Origin: Macrostomum lignano
Taxonomy: Eukaryota
NCBI GenBank assembly: GCA_002269645.1
Contig: NIVC01000576.1
Coordinates: forward strand, 62,001 to 126,000
Length of the DNA: 64,000 nucleotides
Direction: 5' to 3'
Below, in pieces: positions 3,051 through 57,470 of this stretch; positions within the stretch are counted from its first letter, which is position 1; the number at the start of each line of letters is the position of its first letter. The notes beneath the pieces were generated by a model that had not been told where the DNA came from, made no database searches, and worked only from the letters and a program-made list of their open reading frames with translations. The translations under genes were made by a program, and so were the position numbers.

Positions 3051-3140
3051 CGCGGCAGACAAGTGTCTGCTGATTGCTCGCAGGGCTCAATAAATCTACT
3101 TATTTAGCTGCCCACTCACAACTTGCTGCCAAAAGCCGGA

Positions 3141-5533
3141 ATGAGTCGCGCAACCCTGAATCCCGAACTGCTCTGGATCGGTGCAGAATATTGCTACAGG
3201 TTAAACCCGTTAGCCGACTCTTCCCCTAGCAACAATTTGTCCAGTGTAAATCAGCCTCGTCAGCATCAAAATCTCCGACCAGTTGGTCAGCTAGAATCCG
3301 AATCTATGCCAGATAGTTGCTATGGCGACGACGCGGCTGAAGCGGCCACCTGTAGAGTCGCCGCTGCCGCTGTAAAATGCGACGAAATTGAGGAGCAACT
3401 ATCCGGCTGTCAGATTGACAGCGACAATCGGACTGGCCGCTACCGGCTGCGACTGCCGATTCCGTCGGCGTTTCACAAATTTCTAATCGGTCGTCATGGC
3501 GACGCGAAACGACGCTTAGAAGCGGAAACTGGCGTAGAGTTGATAATTCCCGAATGGGAGATACCGAGTCTCCCGTGCTGGCTCTGGGCAGGACTAAAGC
3601 TCAGCTGGCTTCGGCTAAAACTCGAATCGAATTGTTGCTAGCCGACGCGAGAGACCGGCTGCCAATTACGCATTTCTTATCCATCAGTTTGGCCGCGGAG
3701 TCGGTGAGGCATCGGTACGAGCAGTTCCGCGACAGCGCCTTGAAATGGTGCGGCGGAGATCGCGGCATTAACGATGGAGTGTTCCAGGGTGCCGCTAGGC
3801 TGCACGTGACCTGCGCTCCGCTGCTCCTGCTTACCAGCCAGGAGGTGGCCAGGGCCAAGCGGCTGCTGGACGAGTTTGGTCGGGACAGACTGCCCGAGCT
3901 GATGCGAGTGGATAGGTGCGAGATCTTGTCATTTTTAGATAGATAAGCAATATGCCATTTTTAGATAGATTAGCAATATGCCTTTTTTAGATAGATTAGC
4001 AATATGCCATTTTTAGATAGATTAGCAGTATGCCATTTTTAGATAAATTAGCGATGCCATTTTCAGATAGATTAGCAATATGTCATTTTTAGATAGATTA
4101 GCAATATGCCATTTTTCGATAGATTAGCAATATGCCATTTTAAAAGAGTGAATTTAAGCTACATCATTGACACACCTCGCATTGAAACATCCAGCGGCCC
4201 TCTAACCGTGAGCCTGAGCGGCTTAGAAATCATGAACGACGACCCGAGCGACACTAAAGTGCTCTACGCTCAGCTGTGTGAGCCCACAGGCAGACTGCAA
4301 GCTATTGCTAATGCTCTGGCTGACCAATTCCAGTCATTGGCCAGGGCCCAGCCAGGCAGGGAGGGGGTGAAACTGCACGTCACTCTGATGAATGCCAGGT
4401 GATCATTCATGCTTTATCAAAGCCCTCTGTAGCCGGCGTCGCTTCTATATAGCTGGTGTGCCCTCTGTAGCTGGCGCCCCCTCTGTAGCTGGCGTCTCCT
4501 GTGTAGCTGGCGCCCCTCTGTAGCTGGCGTCTTCTGTGTAGCTGGCGCCTCCTCTGTAGCTGGCGCCCCTCTGTAGCTGGCGTCTTCTGTGTAGCTGGCG
4601 CCCCCTCTGTAGCTGGCGTCCCCTCTGTAGCTGGCGCCCCCTCTGTAGCTGGCGCCCCTCTGTAGCTGGCGCCCCTCTGTAGCTGGCGTCCCTCTGTAGC
4701 TGGCGCCCCCTCTGTAGCTGGCGCCCCTCTGTAGCTGGCGCCCCCTCTGTAGCTGGCGCCCCCTCTGTAGCTGGCGCCAATCTGTAGCTGGCGCCAATCT
4801 GTAGCTGGCGTCTCCTGTGTAGCTGGCGCCCCCTCTGTAGCTGGCGTCTTCTGTGTAGCTGGCGCCCCCTCTGTAGCTGGCGCCCCCTCTGTAGCTGGCA
4901 CCCCCTCTGTAGCTGGCGTCTTCTGTGTAGCTGGCGCCCCCTCTGTAGCTGGCGCCCCCTCTGTAGCTGGCGTCTCCTGTGTAGCTGGCGCCCCCTCTGT
5001 AGCTGGCGTCTTCTGTGTAGCTGGCGCCCCCTCTGTAGCTGGCGCCCCCTCTGTAGCTGGCGCCCCCTCTGTAGCTGGCACCCCCTCTGTAGCTGGCACC
5101 CCCTCTGTAGCTGGCGTCCCCTCTGTAGCTGGCGCCCCCTCTGTAGCTGGCGCCCCCTCTGTAGCTGGCGCCCCCTCTGTAGCTGGCGCCCCCTCTGTAG
5201 CTGGCGTCTTCTCTGTAGCTGGCGCCCCCTCTGCAAAGAATTATGGTACAAATAGTAGGACTTAAGTGCCTTGAAGAATCCAGTTAGGATGAGTAATCAC
5301 TGTCCGTTAGCAACTAAATCCCACCATCCCCGGACAGGTACGCCGCAGACTCATCGGACAATCGTCAGAATCGATCGCTAAGTTTCGATGCCGCTCATCT
5401 GCTTAGCAAATTTTCTAATTTTGATTTCGGCAGCTGTCAGCCAGACAGTATCCAATTGTCAAAGTCCTCCTCTGGCACTTCTAAGGACTCTTACTATGCT
5501 TGCGAGCACCGGATTCCTATTTTGCCTAGCTGA
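3141..5533 (+). CDS. ASCC1: Activating signal cointegrator 1 complex subunit 1 (KH domain + 2H phosphoesterase). Exons 3141-3915, 4195-4398, 5338-5533; about 391 aa if one C is restored at about 3551
   Basis: LNPELLWIG..YRLNPL N-terminus; KH loop FLIGRHGDAKRRLEAETG; PITHFLS; two HxT motifs (RLHVTC, KLHVTLMN); LEIMNDDP..VLYA; SFDAAHLLSKFSNFDFGS. All match ASCC1 as recalled. GT-AG junctions give consistent phases. There is a 1-bp frameshift in exon 1. Confidence 0.92.
3930..4142. repeat. 26-bp minisatellite (tagatagattagcaatatgccatttt), about 8 copies, in ASCC1 intron 1
   Basis: Unit read directly. Confidence 0.93.
4423..5234. repeat. 17-20-bp minisatellite (ctgtagctggcgccccct) filling ASCC1 intron 2
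   Basis: Unit read directly. It lies between the donor at 4399 and the acceptor at 5337. Confidence 0.95.
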
Positions 5534-6789: not shown

Positions 6790-7385
6790 GAAGAGTTGGG
6801 GTTAAGGCGTGGCTGATAGCTCGTATCTTGGGCCGCTCTGGTGTGCCAGCGGTCCCAGGCTCGATTCCCAGTGCAGTCACATTAATTTTGAGGCTAAATT
6901 GGAATCTCGGCTTGGCTCTGCTCGTGCAATTAACGGCCTTGAGTGCCAACCCCCAAGGCACAGTGAAGTGTACATGCCTAACGATAAATAAAGTTAGGGC
7001 CGCTGTACACTCCTGTGTGAGTGTGTGCCTGCGTACGTATCCGCGCGCTTGTGTGCCTGCTCAGGGGAGTCGGCGGAATGGGCAGTAACGCCTCTCGCCG
7101 GTTGTGTGACAATTTCACTAAAAGTGCGCCAGGGTGCACACAGCCCCTGCCTCTAAAAATGAAAATAGATATGGCAAATGACTCACAACTAGTTAAAACA
7201 AAAATGAGATCATACAATCACTAATGACTCATTTCTGTAGCTAAAGTATAATGAGCTCACAAAATCACTAATGACTCATTTCTGTAGTTAAAAGTGTAAT
7301 GAGCTCACAAAATCACTAATGACTCATTTATGTATCTAAAAGTGTAATGAGCTCATAAAATCACTAATGACTCGTTTCTGTAGCT
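6790..7385 (+). mobile_element. tRNA-derived SINE-like element, copy 1 (most complete), with a 48-bp tandem tail
   Basis: The head has a D-loop-like GGTTAAGGCG and a B-box-like GGCTCGATTCCC. The body (gcctaacgataaataaag...gggtgcac) recurs at 33819-34437 (+) and 44266-44541 (-). Confidence 0.75.
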
Positions 7386-7869
7386 TGTTTGCCTGCTCAA
7401 AGGAGTCTGAGGAATGTGCAGTAATGCCATTGGCAAAGCGATTTACTCGCACTAAATGACAAGGAAGGATCTTCAAAACTCTTTAGAGATTACGTGTTCC
7501 CTATCCAAACCTAGGTTAGGCTTCATTGTTTGATCGAAATTCAGATTTTTATTCACTCGTCAGCCTATAAGCTATAGGCTATAAGATTTCTGATAAGCGC
7601 TCCGACATTTTATACATTGCTGTTTTCTGACTAAGTCGACGTCTTCATTAGTTACATAGATTCGTTGCCTGAACGGCACTGGGACCCTGTGAGATGCTGT
7701 GGTTCATGGGGGGGGGGGGTTGCCGAGATGTCGAGACTCATGGGGGTTGCTGAAATGCTGTGGCTCATAGAGGGGGGGGGGTCGCTGAGGCTGGGTGGGG
7801 TCACGGAGTGCGAACTGCCTCAGTGCATGCGCATGCTACACCTACATGTAGTTTCTTCGAAAAATGTTG

Positions 7870-7901
7870 GCCTCCCCAACGGGGGGATGCAGATTGCTAG
7901 T
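7870..7901 (+). mobile_element. Helitron-like 3' terminus (GC hairpin followed by CTAG|T)
   Basis: cctccccaacggggggatgcagattgctag|t, similar to 22559-22589. The 5' end was not located. Confidence 0.45.
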
Positions 7902-8399
7902 CCACTATACTAAAATGGGTTGTTTCTATATACTCTTATCTACTCTATAAACTGCATTCATCTTTAGCAGGGATGCCTTTACGAGTAGTTCATATTTAAT
8001 CACTTTCTTGTCGTAAAAATAATGTCCCCTTGATATATTTCTAATTTCTGAGAAATAATTGCACCAACAGCTGTTACAATCTATTTATCTATTTTTTAGC
8101 CATTGTTAATAGCTCGTATACTGGCTCTACAGCCAACTGAATAGCTACGAAGAGCTAATTAACATTTTGACGCGTATATTTGCCAAGTTGTCAAGGTGAA
8201 TGGAGAATATTGTCACTCGTGTAGGCGTGCACTCGGTTTGCTTAGTCGGGTTAGGCGCCACTCAGAAATACGTAATTGGATAAAAAACGTTTAACCCTTG
8301 TGCAGCCATGCAGCATCTACAAGGAAATCAATATCTTTTTTATCCAAACGGTTGACAGACTTTTGTTGTATTTGTAGAGGGATATCATTCCAGAGTGGA

Positions 8400-9460
8400 G
8401 GGAATCTTTTAGGTATTATCTTCTGGGAATCTTTCTAAAAGGAGAGCTAGCATTCGTGGGGCATATTTTTGAGAGGTTATAGAATCCGTAGGGGAATCTT
8501 TCCAAAAAGATTACATTTAGAACCTGTGGGGAAATTTTTCCAAAAGGATCTAGAACCCGTGGGGAATCTTTCCGAAAGGATCTAGAACCCGTGGGGAATC
8601 TTTCCGAAATTATCTATAACCCGTGGGGAATCTTTCCGAAATTATCTATAACCCGTGGGGAATCTTTCCGAAAGTATCTATAACCCGTGGGGAATCTTTC
8701 CGAAATTATCTATAACCCGTGGGGAATCTTTCCGAAATTATCTATAACCCGTGGGGAATCTTTCCGAAAGTATCTATAACCCGTGGGGCAATCTTTCCGA
8801 AAGTATCTAGAACCCGTGGGGAATCTTTCCGAAATTATCTATAACCCGTGGGGAATCTTTCCGAAAGTATCTAGAACCCGTGGGGCAATCTTTCCGAAAG
8901 TATCTAGAACCCGTGGGCAATCTTTCCGAAAGTATCTATAACCCGTGGGGAATCTTTCCAAAAGGATCTAGAACCCGTGGGGCAATCTTTCCGAAATTAT
9001 CTATAACCCGTGGGGAATCTTTCCGAAAGTATCTATAACCCGTGGGGCAATCTTTCCGAAAGTATCTAGAACCCGTGGGGAATCTTTCCGAAATTATCTA
9101 TAACCCGTGGGGAATCTTTCCGAAAGTATCTATAACCCGTGGGGCAATCTTTCCGAAAGTATCTAGAACCCGTGGGCAATCTTTCCGAAAGTATCTATAA
9201 CCCGTGGGGAATCTTTCCGAAAGTATCTAGAACCCGTGGGGCAATCTTTCCGAAAGTATCTAGAACCCGTGGGCAATCTTTCCGAAAGTATCTATAACCC
9301 GTGGGGAATCTTTCCAAAAGGATCTAGAACCCGTGGGGAATCTTTCCGAAATTATCTATAACCCGTGGGGAATCTTTCCGAAATTATCTATAACCCGTGG
9401 GGAATCTTTCCGAAAGTATCTGGAACCAGTTGGACATCTTACCTGTAGGGGAATCTTTCC
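8400..9460. repeat. 32-bp minisatellite (cccgtggggaatctttccgaaagtatctataa), about 30 copies
   Basis: Unit read directly, with degenerate units at both edges. Confidence 0.96.
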
Positions 9461-9528
9461 AACTGGTAAAAGAAGTCTGGCGAATATTTCTTGATTCTCC
9501 TCGACACCGATGTTACTTGCAGCCTTGT

Positions 9529-10996
9529 TTAATTTCTGAGGAAAATAGAACTTTTACCAACTTCGAGACTTAAGTGGCTCGGCAGCAGAGCAAAGCTGAG
9601 CGAGTAGCACTGGCCAGTTTCTGTGAAGAAGATCGCAGCCCGACAACTCCTGGGGTTGCACTTCATCAGACAGCCAAACAGATCAGCTGAGGTCGAATTC
9701 CAATAGGCGATTCCTTTGTAAGAATTGGTCACAAGGACCACTAGAAGTTACCGTTGTATCAGGACGCAACACTTGTAAATATTGCAAAATTATTTGAAGG
9801 CCCGCTTGTTTGCATTGCAGCTAAACTTTAAATGCTCATAACTCCGGACTGGTTGCACCTAGAATGATAATTTTTTCGCCAGGTTGCTCAAAATTTTGTT
9901 CTCTTTCACATGATGCAAAGTTTGGCGCTATATCTACATGTAGGAGCGGCGGGCGTACAGTAAAGTAACGGCAATACGCAATATTTCATTGCAGTCAAAA
10001 TGAATATAAAGTTTGTTTTTTCAACCATAGCCTCCTAGTCTCGATAAAGTAGCAGACCATGCTTTATATCCTGCAGTTTTGAAGCTTTATAAAGCAGATA
10101 ATCTGTACAGAGTTGAGCAGGCTGCAAAGGCGTTATACACTTCACTATCAAAAACCAGTATTATCAAAATCAAGAAAGGCGTAGTATTTTTGAATTCTTG
10201 GCACACCAGCCCAACAAGGACTCCAACATTCATAATCTTTCTTTTGCTGTTCAAATGAACAGTAGGAGTCAAATAAAACTTGTACAGTATCACCAACTTT
10301 ATTTGTATTAAAGTTCACTTTCGATATAAAAACTTCTAATTTCATAAAAATGCATGCGAAATAAGAAAACTAAGCAAAAAACTAAAAGTAAGCCTATGTA
10401 TGTATTTTAAACTTGAACTTCCATATCAATCGAGTCATTCTGTCCAAAAAATCTCTTTTAAACCCCAAAAGACTAACGCAGAGTAAAAGCAAGTGGCACA
10501 AAAGACCGGCAGACGCGGCCCAGAAAGGGAAAACGAACCCCTTAAGCGACGAAATATATTGATTTTGTAATTTAAAAGAGAAAAAAAATATTTTGCCAAA
10601 ATTACGCCGACTCAGCGGCCGCGACGCGTGACTAAATAGCACAGAGCGGGGGGAGGCTGCCCTAAGCCCTGCACGCACGCAGAGCACCAGCACCCCACCA
10701 ACCCACCAAAGCGAGGCCGGGCCGGCGCGGGGGGGTTTAAAACCAGTTAGAGTCAGATACCTGCCTCAAACTGACGTAGAAATCACAAAGCATAATGAAT
10801 CATAAGTACCGTACTTCACCATGGTAGCTCATCAGACATTGATGGATGAACATCTAGATTGGATGAATTGGCACACCTGGAATGAAACCAATGTGAGATC
10901 AATAAATATCTGCTTTGCAATGAACGACAAAATATTTGTTTCTAGTTAATTCTCTCTCTATTGCACTGATAAAAAACTAGATTAGGTTAGGTAGAG

Positions 10997-11085
<89 letters not shown>

Positions 11086-14000
11086 ATTTCCTCTTCTCCC
11101 TCTCCTGTCTCTGTTCTCATTTTTCATCTCTCCTATCATCTTTCTACTCCTCCCTCTTCTCGATCCTCTCTCCTCTCTTCTCGATTCTCTCTCCTATCTA
11201 CTCTTTCCTGTCTCATTTCTTCTCTCATATCTATCTCTCCTCTGTACTCTTTTCTTTCCCCTCTTTTGACTCCTCTCTTTCCTTTCTCTTCTCTTCTCTA
11301 CCTTCTTCTCTACTCTCCCTCTCTTTTCTCTCCACTCTCCTTTATCTCATCTCTTCTTTCATCTCTCTCATTTCTACAATCTTATCTCTTTTCTCTTCCC
11401 TTTACTTTCTCCATCTCTCCTTTCTCCTCTTTTCTCTTCCCTTTAATTTCTCCATCTCTCCTTTCTCCTTTTTTCTCTTCTCTTTTCTCTCTTCTCTACT
11501 TTTTCCTTTCTCTCTTATCTCATCTCTCTTCTTTCTCCTTCTCATCTCTTCCCTCTCCCCTTGCTTCTCTTTCCCCTATTTTTCTCTTTCCCTCCTCTCT
11601 CCTCCTCCCTCCCTCCCGCCAAAGCTAGGCCTATAGTTAGGGCAATACCTTGAGGTAAGTCTAACAATAGTATATATCCTACTATACAAAACTGTCTTAA
11701 TAAGTAAGGAAATAAATATCTTAGGCTTCAAAATATTATTGTATTAACAACAAAAGCTATAAAAACTACAAGCCATATTGCTAAATAAACAAAAAACATA
11801 TTGTCTATAATACTTACTGAGTACAGCTATATTTGTCTTCAAGTTTAGCCTAGGCTAAAATGTTTTTTTTTCTATTTGTCATGTTAATATATAGTGAAAA
11901 CATTATTCTTTTACCCTAGACTTCAGTTTTAAACATAAAACTTCAGCTTAGTAAAATAATATAGGCCTAATTAATCCAGTATAATTAATAATATAAAAAA
12001 AATTAATGGCCATTTAAGGACTACTGATTGATTAATTACTAATTAATTACTCAATTAATTAATATTATATTAATTAATTAATTAATTAATATTACTTTTA
12101 TTAATTAATTACTAATTGAAATTGTATAATATGGAATTTATAAACTTCTATATAAAACTTTCTTGCAAAAAACTAACAAGGATTCTATCCACTATATTAC
12201 ATTATGCTATACCAATCTAAACTATATAAGTATTAGAATGTTGTCCTGTAACCACTGTAAGTAATCAACTATATAGATTTAATTGTGAACTAGGCCTATT
12301 TCAAAACAGTAACAGAATCTAGAATTTTATCATGTTAGGCCTAGGCTAGTAGCAGTTAAAGTTTTAGTATGATAGGGCTATAACTTAGTCATACAGCTAA
12401 AGGCTAAGCTTATAAGCTAAAAATATTACTTTTTGTTGATAGTAAACTAGTTAGAAGCCCATCTGATCCTTTTCTCACGCTTTCGCCAATTTATATAGTA
12501 TGTCTGCTGTGGGCATAAAAACTTCAGAAATTTTAAAACGATCGAGTTGCAAAGTTGCATATAATGACATAATTACTTAAAATATCTAGATTTAACAGAT
12601 TAAAGCCTAAATAAAGTATAAATACACCTATTTATGGAGCTTCTGAGGCTCAAATATAGTGCATGCTTCTTTAAAACAGTCAAGTAGAATACTTTTTTGA
12701 AGGCAAGTACCGATAAATACACGTAAACAAGCGGGCCTTCAAACAATCCCGCAATATTTACGAGTGTTGCGTCCTGATACAACGGTAACTTCTAGTGGTC
12801 CTTGATTGGTCACCGTGAGCTGGGGCAGGCCGGTATGCGTCTGGCGAAAAGATGCAGACGATGATGGACAGCTCGCACCTTGTGGACGAGTTAGAGGCAC
12901 AGCAACTTGCATTCATAAGCATTGAGGCTTTAGAAACAAATTAATCAATCTTGACATGTAGGTAGAACCTATTAAATATCACTTAAAGATAGATTCATTG
13001 AACAACTCGATACACCATCAAAAATATTCCTAAATCCCACCAATCAATCATAAACTAATCAGTTAATCAACGATCAAAGCTGATTTATAGATCCCATCAA
13101 CCATCAATCAATCAAACATCAAAGCTGATTAATAGATCATTAAGTCAGTAAGCTTATCATCTATACGGGGCTACCAGAATTACCTTCGATGTCATCGCCA
13201 GCAGCTTCAGTCTGACTGTTTAATCTGTACACAGAGTTTCGCCAAGCTCCGCCACAGATCTGGCTGGCATTGCCTGGGCAAGCCGCACTGCACTGCGCCT
13301 CGGTATCCGCAGCTCCATGCAATCCGTAGCCCGATCCGCAGAAGCATTCTTCTGTCGATTGCATAGAGAAATATTTGAATCCCAATCCTGCCACAGCTCC
13401 AATTGAGCAGATTCTGTAGCACAGCTCAGTGGTCATTGCTGCGGGCCCTAGTTGACAATCTTACAAACTGACTTGTCAGATCTGATTTCTCTTGAATAGT
13501 CTTATTAAATCTTCTCAGATCTGTTCAAAAAATGTAAGTGACAGATAAAAATCTATGATTAGTATGTTTTGTATGCAAACAATATTTTCCTGCTTTAAAG
13601 GTCGAAAAAGCTTTTATAATGTGATAATTTAATTCACTAATTCACAGTTTAGTTGATCTAACAGATTTCGCAAGGTGATGCAAGTTGCGATTGCATATGT
13701 ATCGAAGGGAAAATTTACAATAGGTAAAAGGAGTACTGCACAGCAGAATTGTATTACATATAAAATTTCAGCATGATGTGTTTCATTTTTACAGTTTAGT
13801 AATCTTAAACTGATATTCCTATGTACATATACATATGTAGTCATTTTTACACTGTCGTAAAATATTTGCTAAATGTATAAGAAACTATAAAAACGTATTT
13901 GTACACTTAAGTAATATATAATAGTTGTATTTACTCATCTAAATGGGCAAATGGGCAAGTTTATAAATAAAAAATGTGCCCTGTTTGTTTTAACTATGTT

Positions 14001-16439
14001 TTCTTTTAAATAAGCTTCTGCTGTAATTTACTCGTAGATCGATTTATCGGATATTCATCTAGGGTTACAAATTTACCAACGCGTCTGCTAATTTGTAGGC
14101 CTAAGCCTATGAAAAGTTTTTTGCTACTTTCTATTTTAATTTTTCAGTAAATACTTTATTTGCAATGCAAGTGACAAGAGCAGCCATTAATGGCCCGAGT
14201 CCAGGAAATGAAGCTAAAGTCTTTGTGTCTTTGTACTGCATTCTGTGCTGTGGTAGCAGTACTAAGAATTTTTTACAAATCTTCAAGCTAACAGACACTC
14301 GATTTTCATCATGTTCTTTAGAAGCACGCCTGCGTTGAGATTTTGTAAGTATGGAGCTTTACATTGTTAATTAGAGAAAAAATGATGATAAGCATTGGCC
14401 TAGCCCTAGCCTAGGCCTACCTAGCCTAAGCCAAGCCCTAGGCACATGACGAAGATGGCCACAGCTCTAAATATCTAAATAGATCATAGGCCTAGGTCTA
14501 TATATTTCCTCATTTCCTATTATTAGTATAATGGAGATAAGTAAGGGAGATAAATACTAGGGCATATACATATAAAATGGAATTAGATTAGGCCTAACCA
14601 AACAAAAACTTGAAAAAACAATTTTGTATTGTGAATAAAGTCTAAAAATCTATTATTGCATGATATTTATATATTCAATTATAATTGAACTTAATAATTT
14701 ATATAACGATAGCACTAGGGGGGGGGGCTAAGTTATGAATTAATATTAAAAAGTTGATAATATAGAGATTAAAAAATTCTATGCTGTAGCCATCTTGGAC
14801 TTGGTTTTACACCTTACATGTATCACTAAGCCATGTTGCCCTTCCATTGTCATTCTATCCTAGTTTTGTTTTGACATTGTTTTTCTAATTTTGACCTAGA
14901 CCTTATTTTTTAAAAAGTATTTGGGCTAAAAATATAGCAGTGAAGTATAATTTGCATATTTAAGAACATTAAGGCAAAACCTTTATGCTTTTTAATCATT
15001 GGGACAGATATTTTAAACCAAATGTGTAGTGTATGAAGGCATTGTCCAGTGTCCAAGCCATTAATTCTTTTATACCCGCAGCCACAGAGCCAACAAATCT
15101 GCTGTCAAGTTTGATTGATATGGTAAATCATCAGATTTTAGAAAGAAGCAAACAAATGCCTTAAAGAAATCATGCAAAATATTGATTTCAACCTACCTGC
15201 AACTTGAGTAAGTATTGTGCATATTTCTTTGAAAAGTACTAGTGTATTTCATTATCATTATTTCAATTATTGTATATGTATATTCCACTTTATTTTTATT
15301 TCAAGATGCTTTTCGGGCTGGCTACGCTATGGACAGACACTGGAGAGCTACTTGGCTGTTGCTCAACCAAGCATCTAGATATTGTGCCAAGACAAGTGTC
15401 AGCAGGCTAATCTGCCAATGGCCGCAGTAGATGTCACTATGAATGGTGCTTGACTTGGTGTGTCAGTTTTTATAAAATTCTTCTTTAACTTTAAAGTTTC
15501 GGATTTGTTTGTTTTTTATGTAATGCACTTAAAACACAAAATTAAAAAAGTAAGGTAAAAAATTACAGTTGCTTTTAACTTTTTGATTGATTAATTAACT
15601 AATTGCAGGTAAAACTTGAAGGAATTTTAAAAGTTTCCTTCATAAAGACGTCAATTAAAACAATTTTTGCTGTTGGTTTTAGTGCTAAATAGTTAAATAG
15701 AAGTACTGGTATAATAGTGAGTTAAACATCTTTTAATTGTTATTAAATTGTTATGCAGTGCTTAAAAGACCTTGCTTTTTGGTTTAGTTGTGACTGCATT
15801 TGCAGATGAATTTTGTTTGCATGTTTCTTTGTGCCAATAAATCCTAAATAAATTGCCAAAGTTGATTTTTTGTTTTCTAATGCCTACAGTCTGTCTTGAA
15901 TATAATAAAATGACAAAAATAAATGTTTTTTCTAATAAATCTAACCTTATATTAAATTATTAATTGCTGTACATAAACACAAATATAAAGCTTTTTAAGC
16001 AATTAATTGTTTATATTCTTTTTCCTTTTATTAATATTCGAGAATCAGAGAACCAAAAATGGTGACCATTGAATTCTGCATGGATAAACATATGCAAAAT
16101 TTCCTGCAATTTCTTGCCAGATCTTACCCAACTCTTGTCAAATCTTACAGGATACCTTAAGTAAGATCTTATAATTTCTTTGGAATTATTGAAGGAATTG
16201 GTAAGTCAGATCTTGTAAGATTTGGCAAGTCATTGTCAACTAGGGGGGTCTTTGACTGCGCCAAAACTTTTCACAGCATACGGACCCAGCCGGGAAATTC
16301 CAACAAGGCCGTCTAGATCTCGCTTGGACGTGTCGACATAGCAACCAACGTAGGTGTAGGTAAGATTGTCATCTACGCATTGAACAGTGTTTACGGCAAG
16401 AATTTCTGCTATTAGAAGCAGCTTCATCAGAGCTAGCAT
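9529..16439 (-). CDS. Secreted WSC-domain protein with a C-terminal PAN/apple-like module. Exons 16439-16241, 13447-13184, and 12878-12805 + 9723-9529 (exon 3 is interrupted by a transposon); 243 aa without the insertion
   Basis: Hydrophobic N-terminus MLALMKLLLIAEILAVNTVQC. WSC motifs YVGCYVD..RDL, MTTELC..IC, ECFCG, CPGNASQICGGAWRNSVY. Exon 2 ends in donor AG|GTAATT, phase-matched to an acceptor with a CTAAC branch site at 12879. Cys spacing C..F...GCLMKC..SCRAAIF...GQCY is PAN-like. Exon lengths sum to 732 nt. An alternative is a stop at 13161 (161 aa, WSC only). Confidence 0.72.
9732..12804. mobile_element. Non-autonomous TIR DNA transposon (P- or hAT-type), 3073 bp, 80-bp TIRs, 8-bp TSD ATTGGTCA
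   Basis: TIRs at 9732-9811 and 12725-12804 (caaggaccactagaagttacc...) match at 75/80. The identical TSD is at 9724-9731 and 12805-12812. No transposase ORF was seen. Confidence 0.92.
10996..11620. repeat. (CT)n microsatellite and pyrimidine-rich low-complexity tract inside the TIR element
   Basis: Pure CT run to about 11083, then CT-rich degenerate sequence. Confidence 0.95.
13446..16245. mobile_element. Putative non-autonomous TIR element coinciding with intron 1 (13448-16240) of the WSC gene
   Basis: Perfect 14-bp terminal inverted repeat ccctagttgacaat / attgtcaactaggg, extended imperfectly to about 43 bp (agatctga at the same offset). Subterminal TCTTAC/GTAAGA repeats. The TSD is ambiguous within G runs. 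Confidence 0.7.
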
Positions 16440-16952
16440 GATTTTTCTGACGTTGTTTTGCAGCTAAAATTTGACGAAGTGAATTATCTTCCAGTAGCTT
16501 GATATGATGAAGATATAAATAATGGAAAATTGCTTGAAAATTGGTTCTCGAACGATTATGGTTGGTTGCAAGCAGATGTAGCCATGCCATTGGCCGGCGT
16601 GGGTGTGCGATAAAAATTTCATCACAAAATTCAGAGCAACCTGACAAAATAAACAATGTACCTTGTCTACAATTTTACATACGCATATGGAAGCTGATTA
16701 AGCTATCTAGATTCCTCAGCTACTTACTATTAGTAGAATGAATCAAATGAGAATGTATTATCAAATTATATTTAATGCTTCAAACGGGCTGGCAGTGTAC
16801 ACTGGCGCTTTATCTACCCCACCCCTCCCCCCATTCCAACCAAGCCCAGTGTACATTCATGCACTCCAAGTCTTCCAGTCTTCCACTGTCCCTCTCGGCC
16901 CCGCTCAGACCACTCTCATACCCTCTCTCTCCCCAGTGCAAGCAAAATAAGG

Positions 16953-16967
16953 GTTACCATTAGCAAC
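16953..16967. promoter_or_regulatory. RFX X-box upstream of TCTE1/DRC5
   Basis: GTTACC-ATT-AGCAAC fits GTNRCC(N0-3)RGYAAC and lies about 145 bp before the ATG of a motile-cilium gene. Confidence 0.75.
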
Positions 16968-17112
16968 GCGGCGCGCGCCAAATTCAAACTGCAAACAAGC
17001 TTGACTATTTTTTAGCAATTTTAAGCAGGCTTTTCTATTTCATCTTGTCATCCGACTAGATTTCAAGCATTTTTTAAGAGCTAGAATTTTCCCCACCAAA
17101 GAACAAAACAGC

Positions 17113-20100
17113 ATGTCGTCGAAACCGCAGACTCCGGCTCCCGATGGCGAGGAGGCGGACCAGACGGCGGCGGCCGCTGAAGCAGCAGCAGAAGGCGATG
17201 AGGCGCCGCCGTCCCGCGCCTCCGGCCGTTCCAAGAAGAGCCAGAGCCAGGCCGCAGGTTCCACGCGACAGCAGACAGAGGCCAACGAAGACGCTGACGA
17301 GGCCGACGCGGTGGCTGGCGATGCTGAGGACGCCGCAGGAGGCGATCCAGATGCCGCCGCCGAAGACGAGGACCTGCCGGAGCAGGAGGTTCAAGAGGAC
17401 CCGGCACTGGACCGGCGCAACATCCGCAAAATCATCGCGGAGGATCCGGAGTGGAACCTGGCCACGGTGCCGGGACTGGCCGAGCTCAGTCTCAAAGGTC
17501 TCGTAGCCAATTTTGAGTACAACTCAGACGTGCTCAACCGAGTCGACCCTGCTCAACAGGCTAAGCTGCTGAAGCGGCTGCCAGTTGACGTGTCAAAGAA
17601 GGTCACCGGGCCGCTGATTCGTGACGAAGGCTATTGGCGTCGCGTGTGCAAAGCGCGGTGGCCCGTGTGCGACGTCAGCCAGTACGACGGAAGCTGGAAG
17701 CGGATGCACTTTGAGCGCGATTTGCAGGTAGTTTTCTAATACCCTTTTAACTTTCTCAATTTTTAATGACTAGAGAAAAACTAGAGCCTGTTGAGTAGTT
17801 GACATTAAAGAGTATTCATTTTAAATCGTTTTTTAAAAAATAGTTTTAATTTCGTTTTACGCATATCATACTTAAAGTTGCTATATAATTATAATTTACT
17901 ACAGTTTATTTTTAATTTAATCTAGGGGAAATGTTAACAAATTTTCTACCTAAAAACTGTAGTAGAGTCTGGGGGATGCTTGCTATCTGGGGGATGCTTG
18001 CTATCTGGGGGATGCTTGCTATCTGGGGGATGCTTGCTATCTGGGGGATGCTTGCTATCTGGGGGATGCTTGCTATCTGGGGATGCTTGCTATCTGGGGG
18101 ATGCTTGCTATCTGGGGGATGCTTGCTATCTGGGGGATGCTTGCTATCTGGGGGATGCTTGCTATCTGGGGGATGCTTGCTATCTGGGGGATGCTTGCTA
18201 TCTGCATGGGGGATGCTTGCTATCTGGGGGATGCTTGCTATCTGGGGGATGCTTGCTATCTGGGGGATGCTTGCTATCTGGGGGATGCTTGCTATCTGGG
18301 GGATGCTTGCTATCTGGGGGATGCTTGCTATCTGCATGGGGGATGCTTGCTATCTGGGGGATGCTTGCTATCGGGGGATGCTTGCCATCTGGGGGTTGCT
18401 TGCTATCTGGGGGATCTGGGGGATGCTTGCTATCTGCAGGGTGCTTGCTATCGGGGGATGCTTGCTATCTGGGGGTTGCTTGCTATCGGGGGGATGCTTG
18501 TTATCTGGGGGATCTGGGGGATGCTTGCTATCTGGGGGTTGCTTGCTATCGGGGGATGCTTGTTATCTGGGGGATCTGGGGATGCTTGCTATCTGGGGGA
18601 TGCTTGCTATCTGGGGGTTGCTTGCTATCGGGGGGATGCTTGCTATCTGGGGGATCTGGGGGATGCTTGCTATCTGCAGGGTGCTTGCTATCGTGGGGAT
18701 GCTTGCTATCTGGGGGATGCTTGCTATCTGCAGGGTGCTTGCTATCTGGGGGATGCTTGCTATCTGGGGGATGCTTGTTATCTGGGGGATGCTTGCTATC
18801 TGCAGGGTGCTTGCTATCGGGGGATGCTTGCTATCTGGGGGATGCTTGCTATCTGGGGGATGCTTGTTATCTGGGGGATGCTTGCTATCTGCAGGGTGCT
18901 TGCTATCGGGGGGATGCTTGCCATCTGGGGGTTGCTTGCTATCTGGGGGATCTGGGGGATGCTTGCTATCTGCAGGGTGCTTGCTATCGGGGGATGCTTG
19001 CTATCTGCATGGGGATGCTTGCTATCTGCATGGGGGATGCTTGCTATCTGGGGGATGCTTGCTATCTGGGGGATGCTTGCTATCTGGGGGATGCTTGCTA
19101 TCTGCATGGGGGATGCTTGCTATCTGGGGGATGCTTGCTATCTGGGGGATGCTTGCTATCTGGGGGATGCTTGCTATCTGGGGGATGCTTGTTATCTGGG
19201 GGATGCTTGCTATCTGCATGGGGGATGCTTGCTATCTGCATGGGGGATGCTTGCTATCTGCATGGGGGATGCTTGCTATCTGCAGGGTGCTTGCTATCGG
19301 GGGATGCTTGCCATCTGGGGGTTGCTTGCTATCTGGGGGATCTGGGGGATGCTTGCTATCTGCAGGGTGCTTGCTATCGGGGGATGCTTGCTATCTGCAT
19401 GGGGGATGCTTGCTATCTGGGGGATGCTTGCTATCTGGGGGATGCTTGCTATCTGGGGGATGCTTGCTATCTGGGGGATGCTTGCTATCTGCATGGGGGA
19501 TGCTTGCTATCTGGGGGATGCTTGCTATCTGGGGATGCTTGCTATCTGGGGGATGCTTGCTATCTGGGGGATGCTTGCTATCTGGGGGATGCTTGCTATC
19601 TGGGGGATGCTTGCTATCTGGGGGATGCTTGCTATCTGGGGGATGCTTGCTATCTGGGGATGCTTGCTATCTGGGGGATGCTTGCTATCTGGGGGATGCT
19701 TGCTATCTGGGGGATGCTTGCTATCTGCAGGGTGCTTGCTATCGGGGGATGCTTGCTATCTGGGGGATGCTTGCTATCTGGGGATGCTTGCTATCTGGGG
19801 GATGCTTGCTATCTGCAGGGTGCTTGCTATCGGGGGATGCTTGCTATCTGGGGGATGCTTGCTATCTGGGGGATGCTTGCTATCTGGGGGATGCTTGCTA
19901 TCTGGGGGATGCTTGCTATCTGGGGGATGCTTGCTATCTGGGGGATGCTTGCTATCTGGGGGATGCTTGCTATCTGGGGGATGCTTGCTATCTGGGGGAT
20001 TCTTGTTATCTGGGGGATGCTTGTTATCTGCAGGGTGCTTGCTATCGGGGGGATGCTTGCTATCTGCAGGGTGCTTGCTATCTGGGGGATGCTTGCTATC

Positions 20101-23100
20101 TGGGGGATGCTTGCTATCTGGGGGATGCTTGCTATCTGGGGATGCTTGTTATCTGGGGATGCTTGCTATCTGCAGGGTGCTTGCTATCGGGGGATGCTTG
20201 CTATCTGGGGGATGCTTGCTATCTGGGGGATCTGGGGATGCTTGCTATCTGCAGGGTGCTTGCTATCGGGGGATGCTTGCTATCTGCATGGGGGATGCTT
20301 GCTATCTGGGGGATGCTTGCTATCTGGGGGATGCTTGCTATCTGGGGGATGCTTGCTATCTGCATGGGGGATGCTTGCTATCTGGGGATGCTTGCTATCT
20401 GGGGATGCTTGCTATCTGGGGATGCTTGCTATCTGGGGGATGCTTGTTATCTGGGGATGCTTGCTATCTGCATGGGGGATGCTTGCTATCTGCATGGGGG
20501 ATGCTTGCTATCTGCATGGGGGATGCTTGCTATCTGCAGGGTGCTTGCTATCGGGGGATGCTTGCCATCTGGGGGTTGCTTGCTATCTGGGGGATCTGGG
20601 GGATGCTTGCTATCTGCAGGGTGCTTGCTATCGGGGGGATGCTTGCCATCTGGGGGTTGCTTGCTATCTGGGGATCTGGGGGATGCTTGCTATCTGCAGG
20701 GTGCTTGCTATCGGGGGATGCTTGCTATCTGGGGGTTGCTTGCTATCGGGGGATGCTTGCTATCTGGGGGATGCTTGCCATCTGGGGGTTGCTTGCTATC
20801 GGGGGATGCTTGCTATCTGGGGGTTGCTTGCTATCTGGGGGATGCTTGCTATCTGGGGGATGCTTGCTATCTGGGGGATGCTTGCTATCTGGGGGATGCT
20901 TGCTATCTGGGGATGCTTGCTATCTGGGGGATGCTTGCTATCTGCAGGGTGCTTGCTATCGGGGGATGCTTGCTATCTGGGGGATGCTTGCTATCTGGGG
21001 GATGCTTGCTATCTGGGGGATGCTTGCTATCTGCAGGGTGCTTGCTATCGGGGGGATGCTTGCTATCTGGGGGATGCTTGCTATCTGGGGGATGCTTGCT
21101 ATCTGGGGGATGCTTGCTATCTGGGGGATGCTTGCTATCTGGGGGATGCTTGCTATCTGGGGATGCTTGCTATCTGGGGATGCTTGCTATCTGGGGGATG
21201 CTTGCTATCTGGGGGATTCTTGTTATCTGGGGGATGCTTGTTATCTGCAGGGTGCTTGCTATCGGGGGGATGCTTGCTATCTGCAGGGTGCTTGCTATCT
21301 GGGGGATGCTTGCTATCTGGGGGATGCTTGCTATCTGGGGGATGCTTGCTATCTGGGGGATGCTTGTTATCTGGGGGATGCTTGCTATCTGCAGGGTGCT
21401 TGCTATCGGGGGGATGCTTGCTATCTGGGGGATGCTTGCTATCTGGGGGATGCTTGCTATCTGCAGGGTGCTTGCTATCTGGGGGATGCTTGCTATCTGG
21501 GGGATGCTTGCTATCTGGGGGATGCTTGTTATCTGGGGGATGCTTGCTATCTGCAGGGTGCTTGCTATCGGGGGATGCTTGCCATCTGGGGTTGCTTGCT
21601 ATCTGGGGGATCTGGGGGATGCTTGCTATCTGCAGGGTGCTTGCTATCGGGGGATGCTTGCTATCTGGGGGTTGCTTGCTATCGGGGGATGCTTGCTATC
21701 TGGGGGATGCTTGCTATCGGGGGTTGCTTGCTATCTGGGGGATGCTTGCTATCTGGGGGTTGCTTGCTATCTGGGGAATGCTTGCTATCTGGGGTTGCTT
21801 GCTATCGGGGGATGCTTGCTATCTGGGGGATGCTTGCTATCTGGGGATGCTTGCTATCTGGGGGATGCTTGCTATCTGGGGATGCTTGCTATCTGGGGGT
21901 TGCTTGCTATCTGGGGGATGCTTGCTATCTGGGGGATGCTTGCTATCTGGGGGATGCTTGCTATCTGGGGGATGCTTGTTATCTGGGGGATGCTTGCTAT
22001 CTGCAGGGTGCTTGCTATCGGGGGATGCTTGCCATCTGGGGGTTGCTTGCTATCTGGGGGATCTGGGGATGCTTGCTATCTGCAGGGTGCTTGCTATCGG
22101 GGGATGCTTGCTATCTGGGGGTTGCTTGCTATCGGGGGATGCTTGCTATCTGGGGGATGCTTGCTATCGGGGGGTTGCTTGCTATCTGGGGGATGCTTGC
22201 TATCTGGGGGTTGCTTGCTATCTGGGGAATGCTTGCTATCTGGGGGTTGCTTGCTATCGGGGGGATGCTTGCTATCTGGGGGATGCTTGCTATCTGGGGG
22301 ATGCTTGCTATCTGGGGGATGCTTGCTATCTGGGGGATGCTTGCTATCTGGGGGATGCTTGCTATCTGGGGGATGCTTGCTATCTGGGGGATGCTTGCTA
22401 TCTGGGGGATGCTTGCTATCTGGGGGTTGCTTGCTATCTGGGGGATGCTTGCTATCTGGGGGATGTTCTGTTTTTAGAGGGAATGTCTGTTGTTTTTTAA
22501 TGAAGGCTTTATTTCGCTGTCTATTTGTTATTTCTAAATAACAAGGATTCTATCCAGAAGTCCCTCATCGGGGGGCGAAGATTGCTAGTTTTCTACCTAA
22601 AAACTAAAAACACCGATTAATCCTAATAATCTTAATAGAAATGATTTTTTAAATAAAATTTGTTTATAAATAAAACGCAATAAAAATCTACGAACTCGTA
22701 TTGCGCAATATTGTTATAAACAATAATAAAAAGAATATCTATAAAAATTAATACCAACAAAAAAGTGAATTAAAAATACAATATAGTCATACCTACGAGT
22801 ATATCAGGAATTAATTTTTTTTCAATTTCATGTAATACAGTAATTGCTATGATTTTATTTCCACTTTTTCATTTCATTTTTATTTGATGCCTAAGCATAG
22901 AATTGAAACCACTGGAATTTAAATTGATTTATATTAACTTTTTTCTGCTCCAAGTTGACAGCAGAATCCAAATTGAAAAGAAGCATTTAAACAAATCACA
23001 ATATTGCCAATTCCACAGGAAGTGATCGAATTCTTCGTGCCGGGCAGCACGGACCCAACTCAGCTCAGCGAGTCGCTCATCCTGGCCGGCCCGTTCGTCC

Positions 23101-23990
23101 GCCGGCTCGTCATCAACCAGCTGCTGCCGCCGGTCGCCGACGACACCGCCGGTCAGGGCGACGACGCCGGCAGCGACCACGGCTCTGACGCGGAGAACGA
23201 GCTGGACAACAGCCACCTGGACTTCGGACCGCTGCTTCCACATCTGCCGAACCTCACGGAGCTGCGACTCTGCTACACCGTCCGCGACTGCGGCATGAAC
23301 TTCGAATGGAGCCTCTTCAACTTCACCGCCAAAGACTGCCTGAAACTCGCCGAAGCTGTGGCCGCTTGTCGTCAGCTGCGAGTGTTGCAGCTCAGCCGCA
23401 GCAAAGTGGACTGCGACCGGTGCCGCATCCTCATCAGCCGGCTGCTGGACCATCCGGGACTGGAGGAGCTGGACCTGTCGCACAACAGCATCGGAGATCG
23501 GGGGGCCCGTGCGCTCGGCAAATTCTTGAATGGCCACAGCAAGCTGGTCCGCTTGGATGTCACGGACAATCTGGTGCGAGCTCAGGGCGCCCAGGCTCTC
23601 GCCCACGCGCTGCTCAAGAACCGCACTCTGCGACAGCTCAGCCTCCGCCTCAACCGGATGGGCGACGATGGCGGCCAGGCCATCGGCAAGGCGCTGATCC
23701 GCAACGACATCCTGGAAGACGTCGACATCTCCAGCAACGAGTTGACAGAGCCGACGGCAACCGTGCTGGCTCAGGTGATCGTCCAGAACAAGACGCTGCA
23801 ACGGCTGAACCTGTGCAACAACCGCCTGGGTGCTGACGGCGGCAAGCAGCTGCAGGAGGGCATGGAGCGGAACCACACCTTGCTGGAGATGGACCTGCGC
23901 TTCACCGAGTGCGGCCAGGAGTCTGAGTACCGCATCTCCCAGGTGCTGGAGAAGAACCAGGAGAGGAGGGAGAAACGACAGAACAAGTAG
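17113..23990 (+). CDS. TCTE1: Dynein regulatory complex subunit 5 (T-complex-associated testis-expressed protein 1), LRR protein. Exons 17113-17727 and 23019-23990; 528 aa
   Basis: Diagnostic segments IIAEDPEWNLATVP, WPVCDVSQYDGSWKRMHFER, VRDCGMNFEWSLF, LDLSHNSIGDRGARA, NELTEPTA, DGGKQLQEGM, QESEY match TCTE1/DRC5 as recalled. Phase-0 GT-AG intron. Confidence 0.96.
17968..22465. repeat. 17/18-bp G-rich minisatellite (gggggatgcttgctatct), about 4.5 kb, in the TCTE1 intron
   Basis: Unit read directly, with variants ctgcagggtg and ctgcatgggg. Confidence 0.98.
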
Positions 23991-24347
23991 CCATCGATAG
24001 ATCAATTGAGGCTGCCTTTGAGTAGGGGGGATTTTAATGGTTGTTTTTTCAGTGTGTGACAAATAATTCATATGATGAGTAGCATCTCTGACTAACAAGA
24101 AACATTCTTTGTTTTATAAAGGAAAACGGCGGTTTCTCTATACAATTGTACTGAAAAAATGTTTTCTAACTTGGCATTGTAAATTTTTTATCTATAGATT
24201 CGGACCAGTTTATTATAATACAATGGCAAAAATACCGTTGTTCCTTTTACCTTTACTTTACCCTTAATACTTTTCGGTTGATTTATATTCACAGGCTGTT
24301 AATATAAAAATGTACCCTTTTACTCGGAGCCCCGAGAATTAATCAGC

Positions 24348-30070: not shown

Positions 30071-30138
30071 TAAAAGTAAGGTGCTAGATATGTCTATATA
30101 AACTAGTTCACCCTTACCTACATGTACTTCATTTCTAG

Positions 30139-32827
<2,689 letters not shown>

Positions 32828-57071: not shown

Positions 57072-57470
57072 GGACGACATCGAGGCTGCGATTTTGTGCC
57101 GATGCGCTGATGGACAGGCGACAGAGCTTCCGCCTTGTCAGCAGTTCGTCTACCTCGGCGGTCTGGTTCCCGGCGTCCGCGAGGATCTGCGGCGTCGCCG
57201 CGGGCTTGCATGGGCTGCCTTTCGTTCTGTGAGGGCTGCAGTCCTGAAGTCCGAGGCCTTACCTGACCGCCAGAGGGCGGCGTTGTTCCAGGCGGTGATT
57301 GAGACAGTCCTGCTGTACAACGTCGAGACCTGGACGCTGACGGAGTCGCTCGAGCAACAAGTTGACGCGGCGCACGCTGGCCTGCTGCGCGCCGCCTTCA
57401 AGATCGGCTACGAGGGAGTGACCTACGAGGCTTTGTATCACCGCACTGGCCTGAGGCGTCTCATTTTTTT
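57072..57470 (+). mobile_element. RTE-like non-LTR retrotransposon fragment (region C-terminal to the RT core)
   Basis: FVYLGG..EDLRRRRGLAWAAF..AVIETVLLYNVETWTL is typical of the post-RT region of RTE-clade LINEs. It is homologous to 62903-63240. Confidence 0.8.

What the first reader, a model, noticed from the sequence alone, without database searches (positions are those of the whole stretch)
13446..16245. An intron that appears to be a transposon: TIR element supplies both splice sites in frame (Introner-like)
Seen in sequence: on the minus strand the WSC-gene intron reads cccta|GTTGACAAT ... ATTGTCAACTAG|gg. The GT and the AG both lie inside a 14-bp perfect inverted repeat (imperfect to about 43 bp) that has subterminal TCTTAC/GTAAGA repeats. 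Splicing gives K-D-P-P-R-P-A-A-M and an intact WSC domain. Inference: if the element is CCCTAG...CTAGGG with a 2-bp GG target duplication, the empty site reads K-D-P-A-A-M, also in frame. Insertion would then have added an intron plus exactly 3 codons. Known Introners create introns this way, but this one is 2.8 kb long. The TSD length is ambiguous because of the G runs, and GTTGAC is a weak donor.
Basis: partly seen in the sequence, partly recalled or inferred. Interest (0 to 1): 0.82.

Follow-up and report, generated by a model that had tools for sequence, protein, structure and literature searches.

The report
Transposon inserted in a flatworm exon
A 2.8-kb non-coding DNA transposon sits in a coding exon of one of three near-identical WSC-domain gene copies in the flatworm Macrostomum lignano, and its ends carry an in-frame GT...AG pair, so it could act as a brand-new intron, but splicing is untested and its donor site is very weak.

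Summary
The window is Macrostomum lignano contig NIVC01000576.1. A 2,800-bp AT-rich element (13446-16245) has perfect 14-bp terminal inverted repeats. It interrupts the WSC-domain exon of an unannotated minus-strand gene.

Two paralogous loci in the same assembly carry the same gene 2-4% diverged and uninterrupted. The insertion is 2,802 nt: the element plus a 2-bp duplication (CC). That rules out TA (Tc1/mariner), TTAA (piggyBac) and 8-bp (hAT) targets.

The GT and AG inside the repeats are in frame and would add 3 codons in a variable loop of the domain.

The 'Introner' reading is unproven:
- No second copy exists in about 123 kb of M. lignano DNA available here.
- The element has no coding capacity.
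- It is over four times longer than any known Introner family.
- A published survey found no Introners in this species.
- The donor CTA|GTTGAC matches 3 of 9 consensus positions.
- 31 other in-frame GT/GC-AG pairs lie nearby.
- No transcript of the gene is on record.

Verdict: a well-documented young exonic transposon insertion and a candidate proto-intron. It is not a demonstrated Introner.

The parts
13446..16245 (-). Non-autonomous TIR DNA transposon. 2,800 bp, 31% GC against 51% in the flanking exons. No ORF longer than 79 aa, no Pfam domain and no protein homologue.
   Evidence: Absent from the paralogous loci L003 and L004.
16232..16245 (-). Terminal inverted repeat at the gene-5' end (minus strand CCCTAGTTGACAAT). 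It contains the candidate donor CTA|GTTGAC, with 16241 as the last exon base.
13446..13459 (-). Terminal inverted repeat at the gene-3' end (minus strand ATTGTCAACTAGGG). It contains the candidate acceptor CTAG|GG, with 13447 as the first exon base.
16246..16247 (-). Target-site duplication, copy 1 (CC on the gene strand, GG on the + strand).
   Evidence: Empty site GAC-TCC-GCA in L003/L004 against GAC-CC[element]CC-C-GCA here. A 3-bp CCC duplication with a 2,799-bp element is the only other fit.
13444..13445 (-). Target-site duplication, copy 2 (CC on the gene strand).
16113..16229 (.). Subterminal repeat cluster. GTAAGATYTGRCAAG motifs occur in both orientations around a BglII-like AGATCT core. 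These are presumed transposase-binding sites.
   Evidence: (families D1, I6).
13472..13523 (.). Subterminal repeats at the other end (CTTGTCAGATCTG and CTTCTCAGATCTG).
16248..16439 (-). WSC gene, first half of the ancestral exon. It runs from the ATG at 16439 through the signal peptide and the start of the WSC domain to ...GAVKD.
   Evidence: 98% identical to L003/L004.
13184..13443 (-). WSC gene, second half of the ancestral exon ((P)AAMTTELC...DDIE). It ends at the conserved donor GAAG|GTAATT.
16278..16295 (-). Alternative cryptic donor TGG|GTCCGT, with 16286 as the last exon base. It matches 5 of 9 consensus positions and is in frame with all three nearby acceptors.
   Evidence: The resulting protein matches the full WSC model (59 bits).
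16360..16375 (-). 16-mer inside exon 1 (TAGATGACAATCTTAC) that matches the element terminus TAGTTGACAATCTTAC at 15 of 16 positions. Unexplained.
   Evidence: (pair I9). The paralogues have TAGATAACAATCTTAC.

Best explanation
A cut-and-paste type, non-autonomous DNA transposon inserted into the coding exon of one of at least three near-identical copies of a small secreted WSC-domain gene in Macrostomum lignano. It is 2,800 bp long, with 14-bp perfect terminal inverted repeats, subterminal repeat clusters and a 2-bp CC target duplication. The insertion came after the gene copies diverged by about 2-4%.

Shown:
- The insertion, its exact boundaries and the intact empty site in the other copies.
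- The lack of coding capacity in the element.
- The position of the insertion in a lineage-specific loop of the WSC domain.

Shown at sequence level only: the palindromic CTAG in each repeat yields a GT 5 nt inside one end and an AG 2 nt inside the other. Removing 16240-13448 would leave 7 nt of element plus the 2-bp duplication. That is 9 nt, or three codons (S/P becomes P-P-R-P). Because the repeats are identical, the same 9 nt would be left in either orientation.

Inferred: this copy is most likely a tolerated, largely disrupted or inefficiently and heterogeneously spliced allele, buffered by two intact paralogues. It is a candidate proto-intron rather than an established intron or a member of an intron-generating family.
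For: - Identity of the window: the DRC5 neighbour is 100% identical to M. lignano PAA80519.1, and L002 equals window 7113-18000 at 100%.
- Empty sites: L003 (NIVC01002775.1) and L004 (NIVC01000064.1) read GGCGCAGTCAAAGACTCCGCAGCAATGACC with no trace of the element. Their flanks differ from the window by 1.9-3.9%.
- A 49%-identical paralogue (Mlig003278g1) also has no intron at this position.
- Repeats and motifs.
- No coding capacity: no Pfam domain in six frames, and no homologue of any open stretch among 5.8 billion proteins.
- Weak donor and many alternatives: CTA|GTTGAC matches 3 of 9 positions. 32 in-frame GT/GC-AG pairs lie nearby, including TGG|GTCCGT at 5 of 9.
- The two ends can pair in RNA at -39 kcal/mol, against -16.8 +/- 3.4 for shuffles. 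That would bury both candidate splice sites in a stem.
- The gene is unannotated in all three loci of a transcript-based annotation. No transcript-derived protein matches it.
- dN/dS between the window copy and L003 is 0.61, from 10 nonsynonymous and 5 synonymous differences, so constraint is weak.
Against: - The exon halves flanking the element have no stop codon or frameshift, so nothing shows that this copy is decaying.
- The GT and AG lie symmetrically in the repeats. The residue is a whole number of codons in a permissive loop. That is what an element adapted to be spliced would look like.
- M. lignano does have multi-kb introns. The DRC5 intron next door is 5.3 kb.
- Flatworm splice-site tolerance was not measured here.
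Confidence: 0.6

Rival explanations
1. This is a working new intron of the Introner type. The element family is adapted so that the CTAG in each repeat supplies the donor (CTA|GT) and the acceptor (CTAG|). It is efficiently spliced and leaves +3 codons, the gene copy stays functional, and other copies in the genome do the same.
For: - GT and AG lie inside the perfect repeats, in frame, and independent of orientation.
- The empty site in the paralogues proves that a continuous exon was split.
- The open reading frame is intact on both sides.
- The insertion is in a variable loop.
- A plausible branch site, CTGAC, lies about 28 nt upstream of the AG (read from the sequence).
- Introner families that add or remove whole codons are known (PMC9860276).
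Against: - The donor matches only 3 of 9 consensus positions. Better in-frame cryptic donors lie nearby.
- Both sites would sit inside a -39 kcal/mol stem.
- No other copy was found in about 123 kb.
- At 2.8 kb it is far outside the 30-654 nt median lengths of known families.
- M. lignano was scored Introner-negative in a 3,325-genome survey.
- I estimate roughly a 10% chance that any 14-bp repeat pair offers an in-frame GT/AG.
- There is no transcript evidence.
Confidence: 0.22
2. The intron is old and the element merely colonised it. Alternatively, the element was ancestral and the paralogues lost it by precise excision or intron loss.
For: Cut-and-paste elements can excise, and intron loss by gene conversion between paralogues is possible in a duplicated genome.
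Against: - The presence/absence boundary coincides exactly with the repeat ends plus a 2-bp duplication. No residual intron sequence and no excision footprint remains in L003 or L004.
- The distant paralogue also lacks an intron here.
- The empty site is an in-frame codon (TCC).
Confidence: 0.04
3. This is an assembly artefact: a chimeric long read or mis-join placed a repeat inside the gene.
For: The assembly is built from long reads and is highly repetitive. The homopolymer runs at the junctions (C5/G3C3) are error-prone.
Against: - An artefact would not produce perfect inverted termini flanked by a target-site duplication at an otherwise collinear site.
- The same sequence is present in the window and in the independently fetched record L002. 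Both come from the same assembly, so this check is weak.
Confidence: 0.03

Closest known systems
Introners / Introner elements (Micromonas, Aureococcus, dinoflagellates and others; Gozashti et al. 2022, PMC9860276; review PMC11282704)
   Same: - It is a non-autonomous DNA transposon with terminal inverted repeats and a short target-site duplication.
- It is inserted in a coding exon, with canonical GT...AG available at its ends.
- The mRNA would change by a whole number of codons, which is reported for some families.
- Homologous empty sites exist.
   Different: - Only one copy is seen here. Families have 5 to more than 2,000 copies.
- It is 2,800 bp against median lengths of 30-654 nt.
- Both splice sites lie inside the element. 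In the classic cases one is recruited from the target-site duplication.
- The donor is very weak and splicing has not been shown.
- The host species was scored negative in the published survey.
Splicing of exonic transposon insertions through cryptic sites near their ends (maize Ds/dSpm alleles, C. elegans Tc1 alleles). Recalled from the literature, not checked here.
   Same: A single cut-and-paste element sits in an exon, and GT/AG dinucleotides in or near its termini could remove most of it from the mRNA. The removal would be imprecise and would leave a few extra codons.
   Different: Those cases have RNA evidence and known autonomous partners. Here there is neither.
MITE-derived non-canonical introns of Fritillaria borealis and euglenid nonconventional introns (PMC11282704)
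   Same: The inverted repeats can pair in the pre-mRNA and bring the two intron ends together. Here the pairing is -39 kcal/mol.
   Different: Those introns use non-canonical borders and a modified splicing system. Here the candidate borders are GT-AG, and no such tolerance is known for M. lignano.
ISL2EU (2-bp duplication) and PIF/Harbinger or Micromonas-type elements (3-bp duplication) (PMC4122938)
   Same: A 2-bp (or possibly 3-bp) target duplication with short inverted repeats.
   Different: ISL2EU duplications are typically AT and PIF/Harbinger ones TWA. Here the duplication is CC(C). There is no transposase to classify, so the superfamily is unassigned.

Membership tests
Introner / Introner-like element | Multi-copy family of similar sequences that form introns in unrelated genes (5 to more than 2,000 copies per genome) | not testable with these tools
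   The M. lignano genome cannot be searched by DNA here. No second copy was found in the 64-kb window or in L001, L003 and L004, about 60 kb. The published survey lists M. lignano without Introners.
Introner / Introner-like element | The element is removed from the mRNA by the spliceosome at defined sites | not testable with these tools
   There is no RNA-seq access. The gene is unannotated, and no transcript-derived protein is in the 5.8-billion-protein collection.
Introner / Introner-like element | Transposon hallmarks (TIR and/or TSD) with a homologous empty site showing recent gain inside coding sequence | tested here: met
   14-bp perfect repeats, a 2-bp duplication, and intact in-frame empty sites in two paralogues.
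Introner / Introner-like element | Splice sites supplied by the element or the TSD so that the reading frame is preserved | tested here: inconclusive
   GT and AG lie inside the repeats and leave +9 nt in frame. However, the donor matches 3 of 9 consensus positions, and 31 other in-frame pairs exist nearby.
Introner / Introner-like element | Short length (family medians 30-654 nt) | tested here: not met
   The element is 2,800 bp against the published range.
Non-autonomous cut-and-paste (class II, TIR) DNA transposon | Terminal inverted repeats, flanking target-site duplication, precise presence/absence at a homologous site, no transposase gene | tested here: met
Tc1/mariner | TA target-site duplication | tested here: not met
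   A TA model (element GTTGAC...GTCAAC) predicts the empty site GAC-CCCCC-TA-GGGCCC-GCA. The real empty site is GAC-TCC-GCA.
hAT | 8-bp target-site duplication | tested here: not met
   The flanking 8-mers GACCCCCC and GGGCCCGC would need 5 substitutions in 16 nt relative to the empty-site 8-mer GACTCCGC. Background divergence is 2-4%.
piggyBac | TTAA target duplication (termini starting CCC... are recalled from memory) | tested here: not met
   The termini start CCCTAG, but the flanks are CC/CC and the empty site has no TTAA.
ISL2EU | 2-bp TSD (typically AT); THAP-DDE transposase | tested here: inconclusive
   The duplication length fits but its sequence (CC) is atypical. There is no transposase to test.
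WSC-domain protein (host gene) | Match to Pfam PF01822 above the gathering score | tested here: met
   52.6-59.1 bits against a cut-off of 27.8 for the spliced, empty-site and alternative-donor versions.

The most novel reading that the evidence does not exclude
The element belongs to a so far undescribed M. lignano family whose repeats are pre-adapted for splicing. The palindromic CTAG gives CTA|GT at one end and CTAG| at the other, in either orientation. That always leaves 7 nt plus the 2-bp duplication, so two of the three reading phases survive an exonic hit. This would make a flatworm the third animal lineage with Introner-type intron creation. Its elements would be several-fold longer than any known Introner and would carry both splice sites themselves.
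Probability: 0.12. Interest if true: 0.8.

Novelty: new member of a known kind. Interest (0 to 1): 0.35.

Why it matters
Clear cases in animals where a continuous exon has been split by a transposon, with the uninterrupted version still present in the same genome, are rare. They are the raw material for studying how new introns arise.

Here the filled site and two empty sites sit in one assembly, only 2-4% apart, and the junctions are known to the base. One RNA-seq mapping and one genome-wide BLAST would therefore decide whether this is a dead gene copy, a leaky cryptically spliced allele, or the first sign of an intron-generating transposon family in flatworms.

As it stands it is a well-documented young transposon insertion, which is ordinary in a genome this rich in repeats.

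Tried and rejected
1. Looked for a transposase or any coding remnant. Six-frame Pfam scans and a search with all open stretches joined into one query found nothing.
2. Looked for other copies.
   - Self-BLAST of the element against the window found only itself.
   - The terminus with up to 2 mismatches hit only the two ends, plus one chance-level site at 12282-12295 with no partner.
   - L001, L003 and L004 had none.
   - An exact look-up of the 71-aa element ORF found nothing.
3. Ran two metagenome scans. The first found nothing. The second found two 21-22-nt matches in bacterial-looking intergenic DNA (L005, L006) with no further similarity, which I judged to be chance.
4. Considered the alternative donor G|GTCCGT as the true exon end. 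I did not adopt it as the ancestral boundary, because GPYAV... is conserved in the 49% paralogue and is continuous in L003/L004. It remains a likely cryptic donor after the insertion.
5. Rejected the TA, 8-bp and TTAA duplication models against the empty site.
6. Tried to polarise the 15 coding differences with the distant paralogue. It is too divergent: derived-looking states occur in both lineages, so there is no signal of decay specific to the window copy.
7. L003 and L004 never became readable by scripts. I compared them through the alignment and pattern tools instead.
Full report
**What is there.** On the minus strand the window reads ...GGCGCAGTCAAAGACCC|CCCTAGTTGACAAT......ATTGTCAACTAGGG|CCCGCAGCAATGACC.... 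The two 14-nt arms (16232-16245 and 13446-13459) are perfectly complementary (pair I14). Similarity between the ends continues imperfectly to about 40 nt, with a 9-10 nt indel.

Both ends carry clusters of a roughly 15-nt motif, GTAAGATYTGRCAAG, built around AGATCT. All three exact matches in the 64-kb window, and six of the seven matches with up to three mismatches, lie within about 135 nt of the element ends.

The 2,800 bp between the outer edges are 31% GC, against 51% in the flanking exon. There is no open stretch longer than 79 codons, no Pfam domain in any frame, and no relative of any open stretch among 5.8 billion proteins. By anatomy this is a non-autonomous DNA transposon with terminal inverted repeats.

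**The host gene.** Upstream of the element is an ORF that starts at the ATG at 16439: a signal-peptide-like MLALMKLLLIAEILAVNTVQC, then ...YTYVGCYVD.... Downstream is ...AAMTTELCYRIC...CGGAWRNSVYRL.... Joined, they give a significant WSC domain (PF01822, E about 5e-14).

**Where the window comes from.** The neighbouring gene (17113-23990, + strand) is 100% identical to Macrostomum lignano PAA80519.1, a DRC5/TCTE1 protein named Mlig013721g2. The record fetched for that protein is identical to window 7113-18000. The window is therefore NIVC01000576.1 of assembly GCA_002269645.1, and window position + 62,000 gives the record position.

**The decisive evidence: empty sites.** The same 90% protein cluster holds Mlig013721g1 and g3, on two other contigs. 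Their loci, L003 and L004, carry the same WSC gene in the same head-to-head position, but about 2.7 kb closer to DRC5.

Both read ...GGCGCAGTCAAAGACTCCGCAGCAATGACC..., which translates as G-A-V-K-D-S-A-A-M-T in one continuous exon. Alignments show collinear flanks with 1.9-3.9% substitutions against the window. L003 and L004 differ from each other by 0.3-1.4%. Neither locus contains the terminal 14-mer, even with two mismatches allowed. A distant paralogue, Mlig003278g1 (49% identity), is also continuous across this point.

**Size of the target duplication.** Between GAC and GCAGCA the empty site has 3 nt (TCC). The filled site has CC + CCCTAG...CTAGGG + CCC, so 2,802 nt were added.
- The symmetric solution is a 2,800-bp element with perfect 14-bp repeats and a 2-bp duplication, CC.
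- The only other consistent split is a 3-bp CCC duplication with a 2,799-bp element and unequal ends.
- A TA duplication (Tc1/mariner) predicts a different empty site.
- An 8-bp hAT-type duplication would need five substitutions in 16 nt.
- There is no TTAA.
- ISL2EU elements make 2-bp duplications, but typically AT (PMC4122938).

Without a transposase the superfamily stays open.

The CTAG in each repeat yields CTA|GT at one end and CTAG|GG at the other. Removing 16240-13448 (2,793 nt) leaves 7 nt of element plus the duplication, which is 9 nt, giving ...K-D-P-P-R-P-A-A-M.... Because the repeats are identical, the same would hold in the opposite orientation. In one of the three reading phases the residue would read TAG.

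The site lies in a lineage-specific loop. Pfam aligns only model positions 22-82 (window) or 15-82 (L003) when the loop is present. It aligns the whole model (1-82, 59 bits) when 15 loop residues are skipped. Three extra residues there are plausibly tolerated.

**Several results weaken the step from 'could be spliced' to 'is an intron that a transposon designed'.**
1. CTA|GTTGAC matches the metazoan donor consensus CAG|GTAAGT at 3 of 9 positions, two of them the obligatory GT. The real donors seen nearby are CAG|GTAGTT (DRC5), GAAG|GTAATT (WSC exon end) and CAG|GCAAGT (paralogue).
2. Within 120 nt upstream and 40 nt downstream there are 32 GT/GC-AG pairs that keep the frame open. One uses the donor TGG|GTCCGT (5 of 9 positions) 45 nt upstream. 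In-frame pairs are therefore cheap. By my rough estimate about one in ten arbitrary 14-bp repeat pairs would offer one inside the repeats.
3. The two ends can pair in RNA at -39 kcal/mol, against -16.8 +/- 3.4 for shuffled controls. That would bury both candidate sites, although in some organisms such stems help to bring intron ends together (PMC11282704).
4. The gene is not annotated in any of the three loci of a transcript-based annotation. The protein search found no transcript-derived relative, although transcript assemblies of the neighbouring gene are present. Expression is therefore low or absent in the sampled material.
5. dN/dS between the window copy and L003 is 0.61, from 10 nonsynonymous and 5 synonymous differences. 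There are no stops or frameshifts. That is too few changes to tell a living copy from a dead one.

**Is it an Introner?** Introners are defined by multi-copy families of similar introns, with 5 to more than 2,000 copies and median lengths of 30-654 nt. Many have inverted repeats and target duplications, and some add or delete codons (PMC9860276).
- I could not search the M. lignano genome by DNA. In the roughly 123 kb of it that I could read there is no second copy.
- Two metagenome scans gave nothing homologous.
- The supplementary table of the 2022 survey lists Macrostomum_lignano as aquatic with no Introners (I inferred the column meaning from species known to be positive). That pipeline works on annotated introns, so it would miss this unannotated gene.
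- The same paper found Introners in only two animal groups.

**Conclusion.** The transposon insertion into a formerly continuous exon is established. Whether it is spliced, and whether a family behind it makes introns, is open. I put about 0.2 on efficient splicing at the repeat-embedded sites and about 0.12 on a true Introner-like family. The most likely state is a young insertion in a redundant gene copy, tolerated because two intact paralogues exist, with at best cryptic and inefficient splicing.

Noticed in passing
window 16360-16375 (minus strand, inside WSC exon 1): TAGATGACAATCTTAC matches the element terminus TAGTTGACAATCTTAC (13449-13464) at 15 of 16 positions, 115 nt upstream of the insertion. 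The paralogues have 14 of 16. For a given 16-mer within +/-500 nt I estimate a chance of about 2e-5 to 5e-4. It might be a transposase-binding mimic that attracted the insertion, or a coincidence.
   Followed up: partly
window 17968-22465: A 4.5-kb array of an 18-nt unit (about 255 copies) fills the single intron of the DRC5/TCTE1 gene. The paralogous genes span 4.4 and 3.1 kb instead of 6.9 kb, so the array size differs strongly between copies.
   Followed up: partly
window 1010-3051, 4423-5233, 8521-9421, 24343-26744, 28326-30073, 30474-31576, 51948-56164 and others: About a third of the window is minisatellite or tandem arrays, with periods of 4-97 nt and up to 275 copies. Many create long spurious ORFs.
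   Followed up: no
window about 16705 and about 16840 (upstream of the WSC ATG): Relative to L003/L004 the window copy lacks 104 bp about 270 nt upstream of the ATG. It has an extra 23-nt G-rich insert (GGTTGGAATGGGGGGAGGGGTGG) further upstream. Either could affect the promoter of this copy.
   Followed up: no
L004 about 8240 downward (minus strand), alignment A2 column 757 onward: L004 diverges abruptly from the window and L003 inside the WSC gene's next intron, and L003 has extra copies of a 45-nt repeat there. Structural turnover between the three copies is high.
   Followed up: no
L001 1736-1850: The annotated partial protein Mlig003278g1 starts downstream of an in-phase ATG and signal peptide that is one frameshift away. 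This looks like an indel error or a pseudogene. Its intron uses a GC donor (CAG|GCAAGT).
   Followed up: no
window 57094-57639: An ORF with a reverse-transcriptase C-terminal look (...LLYNVETWTLTESLEQQVDAAHAGLLRAAF...). It is probably a LINE fragment.
   Followed up: no
window 12282-12295: GCCTAGTTCACAAT resembles the element terminus with 2 mismatches. It has no partner end and no subterminal motifs, and it is at chance level (0.5 expected).
   Followed up: yes
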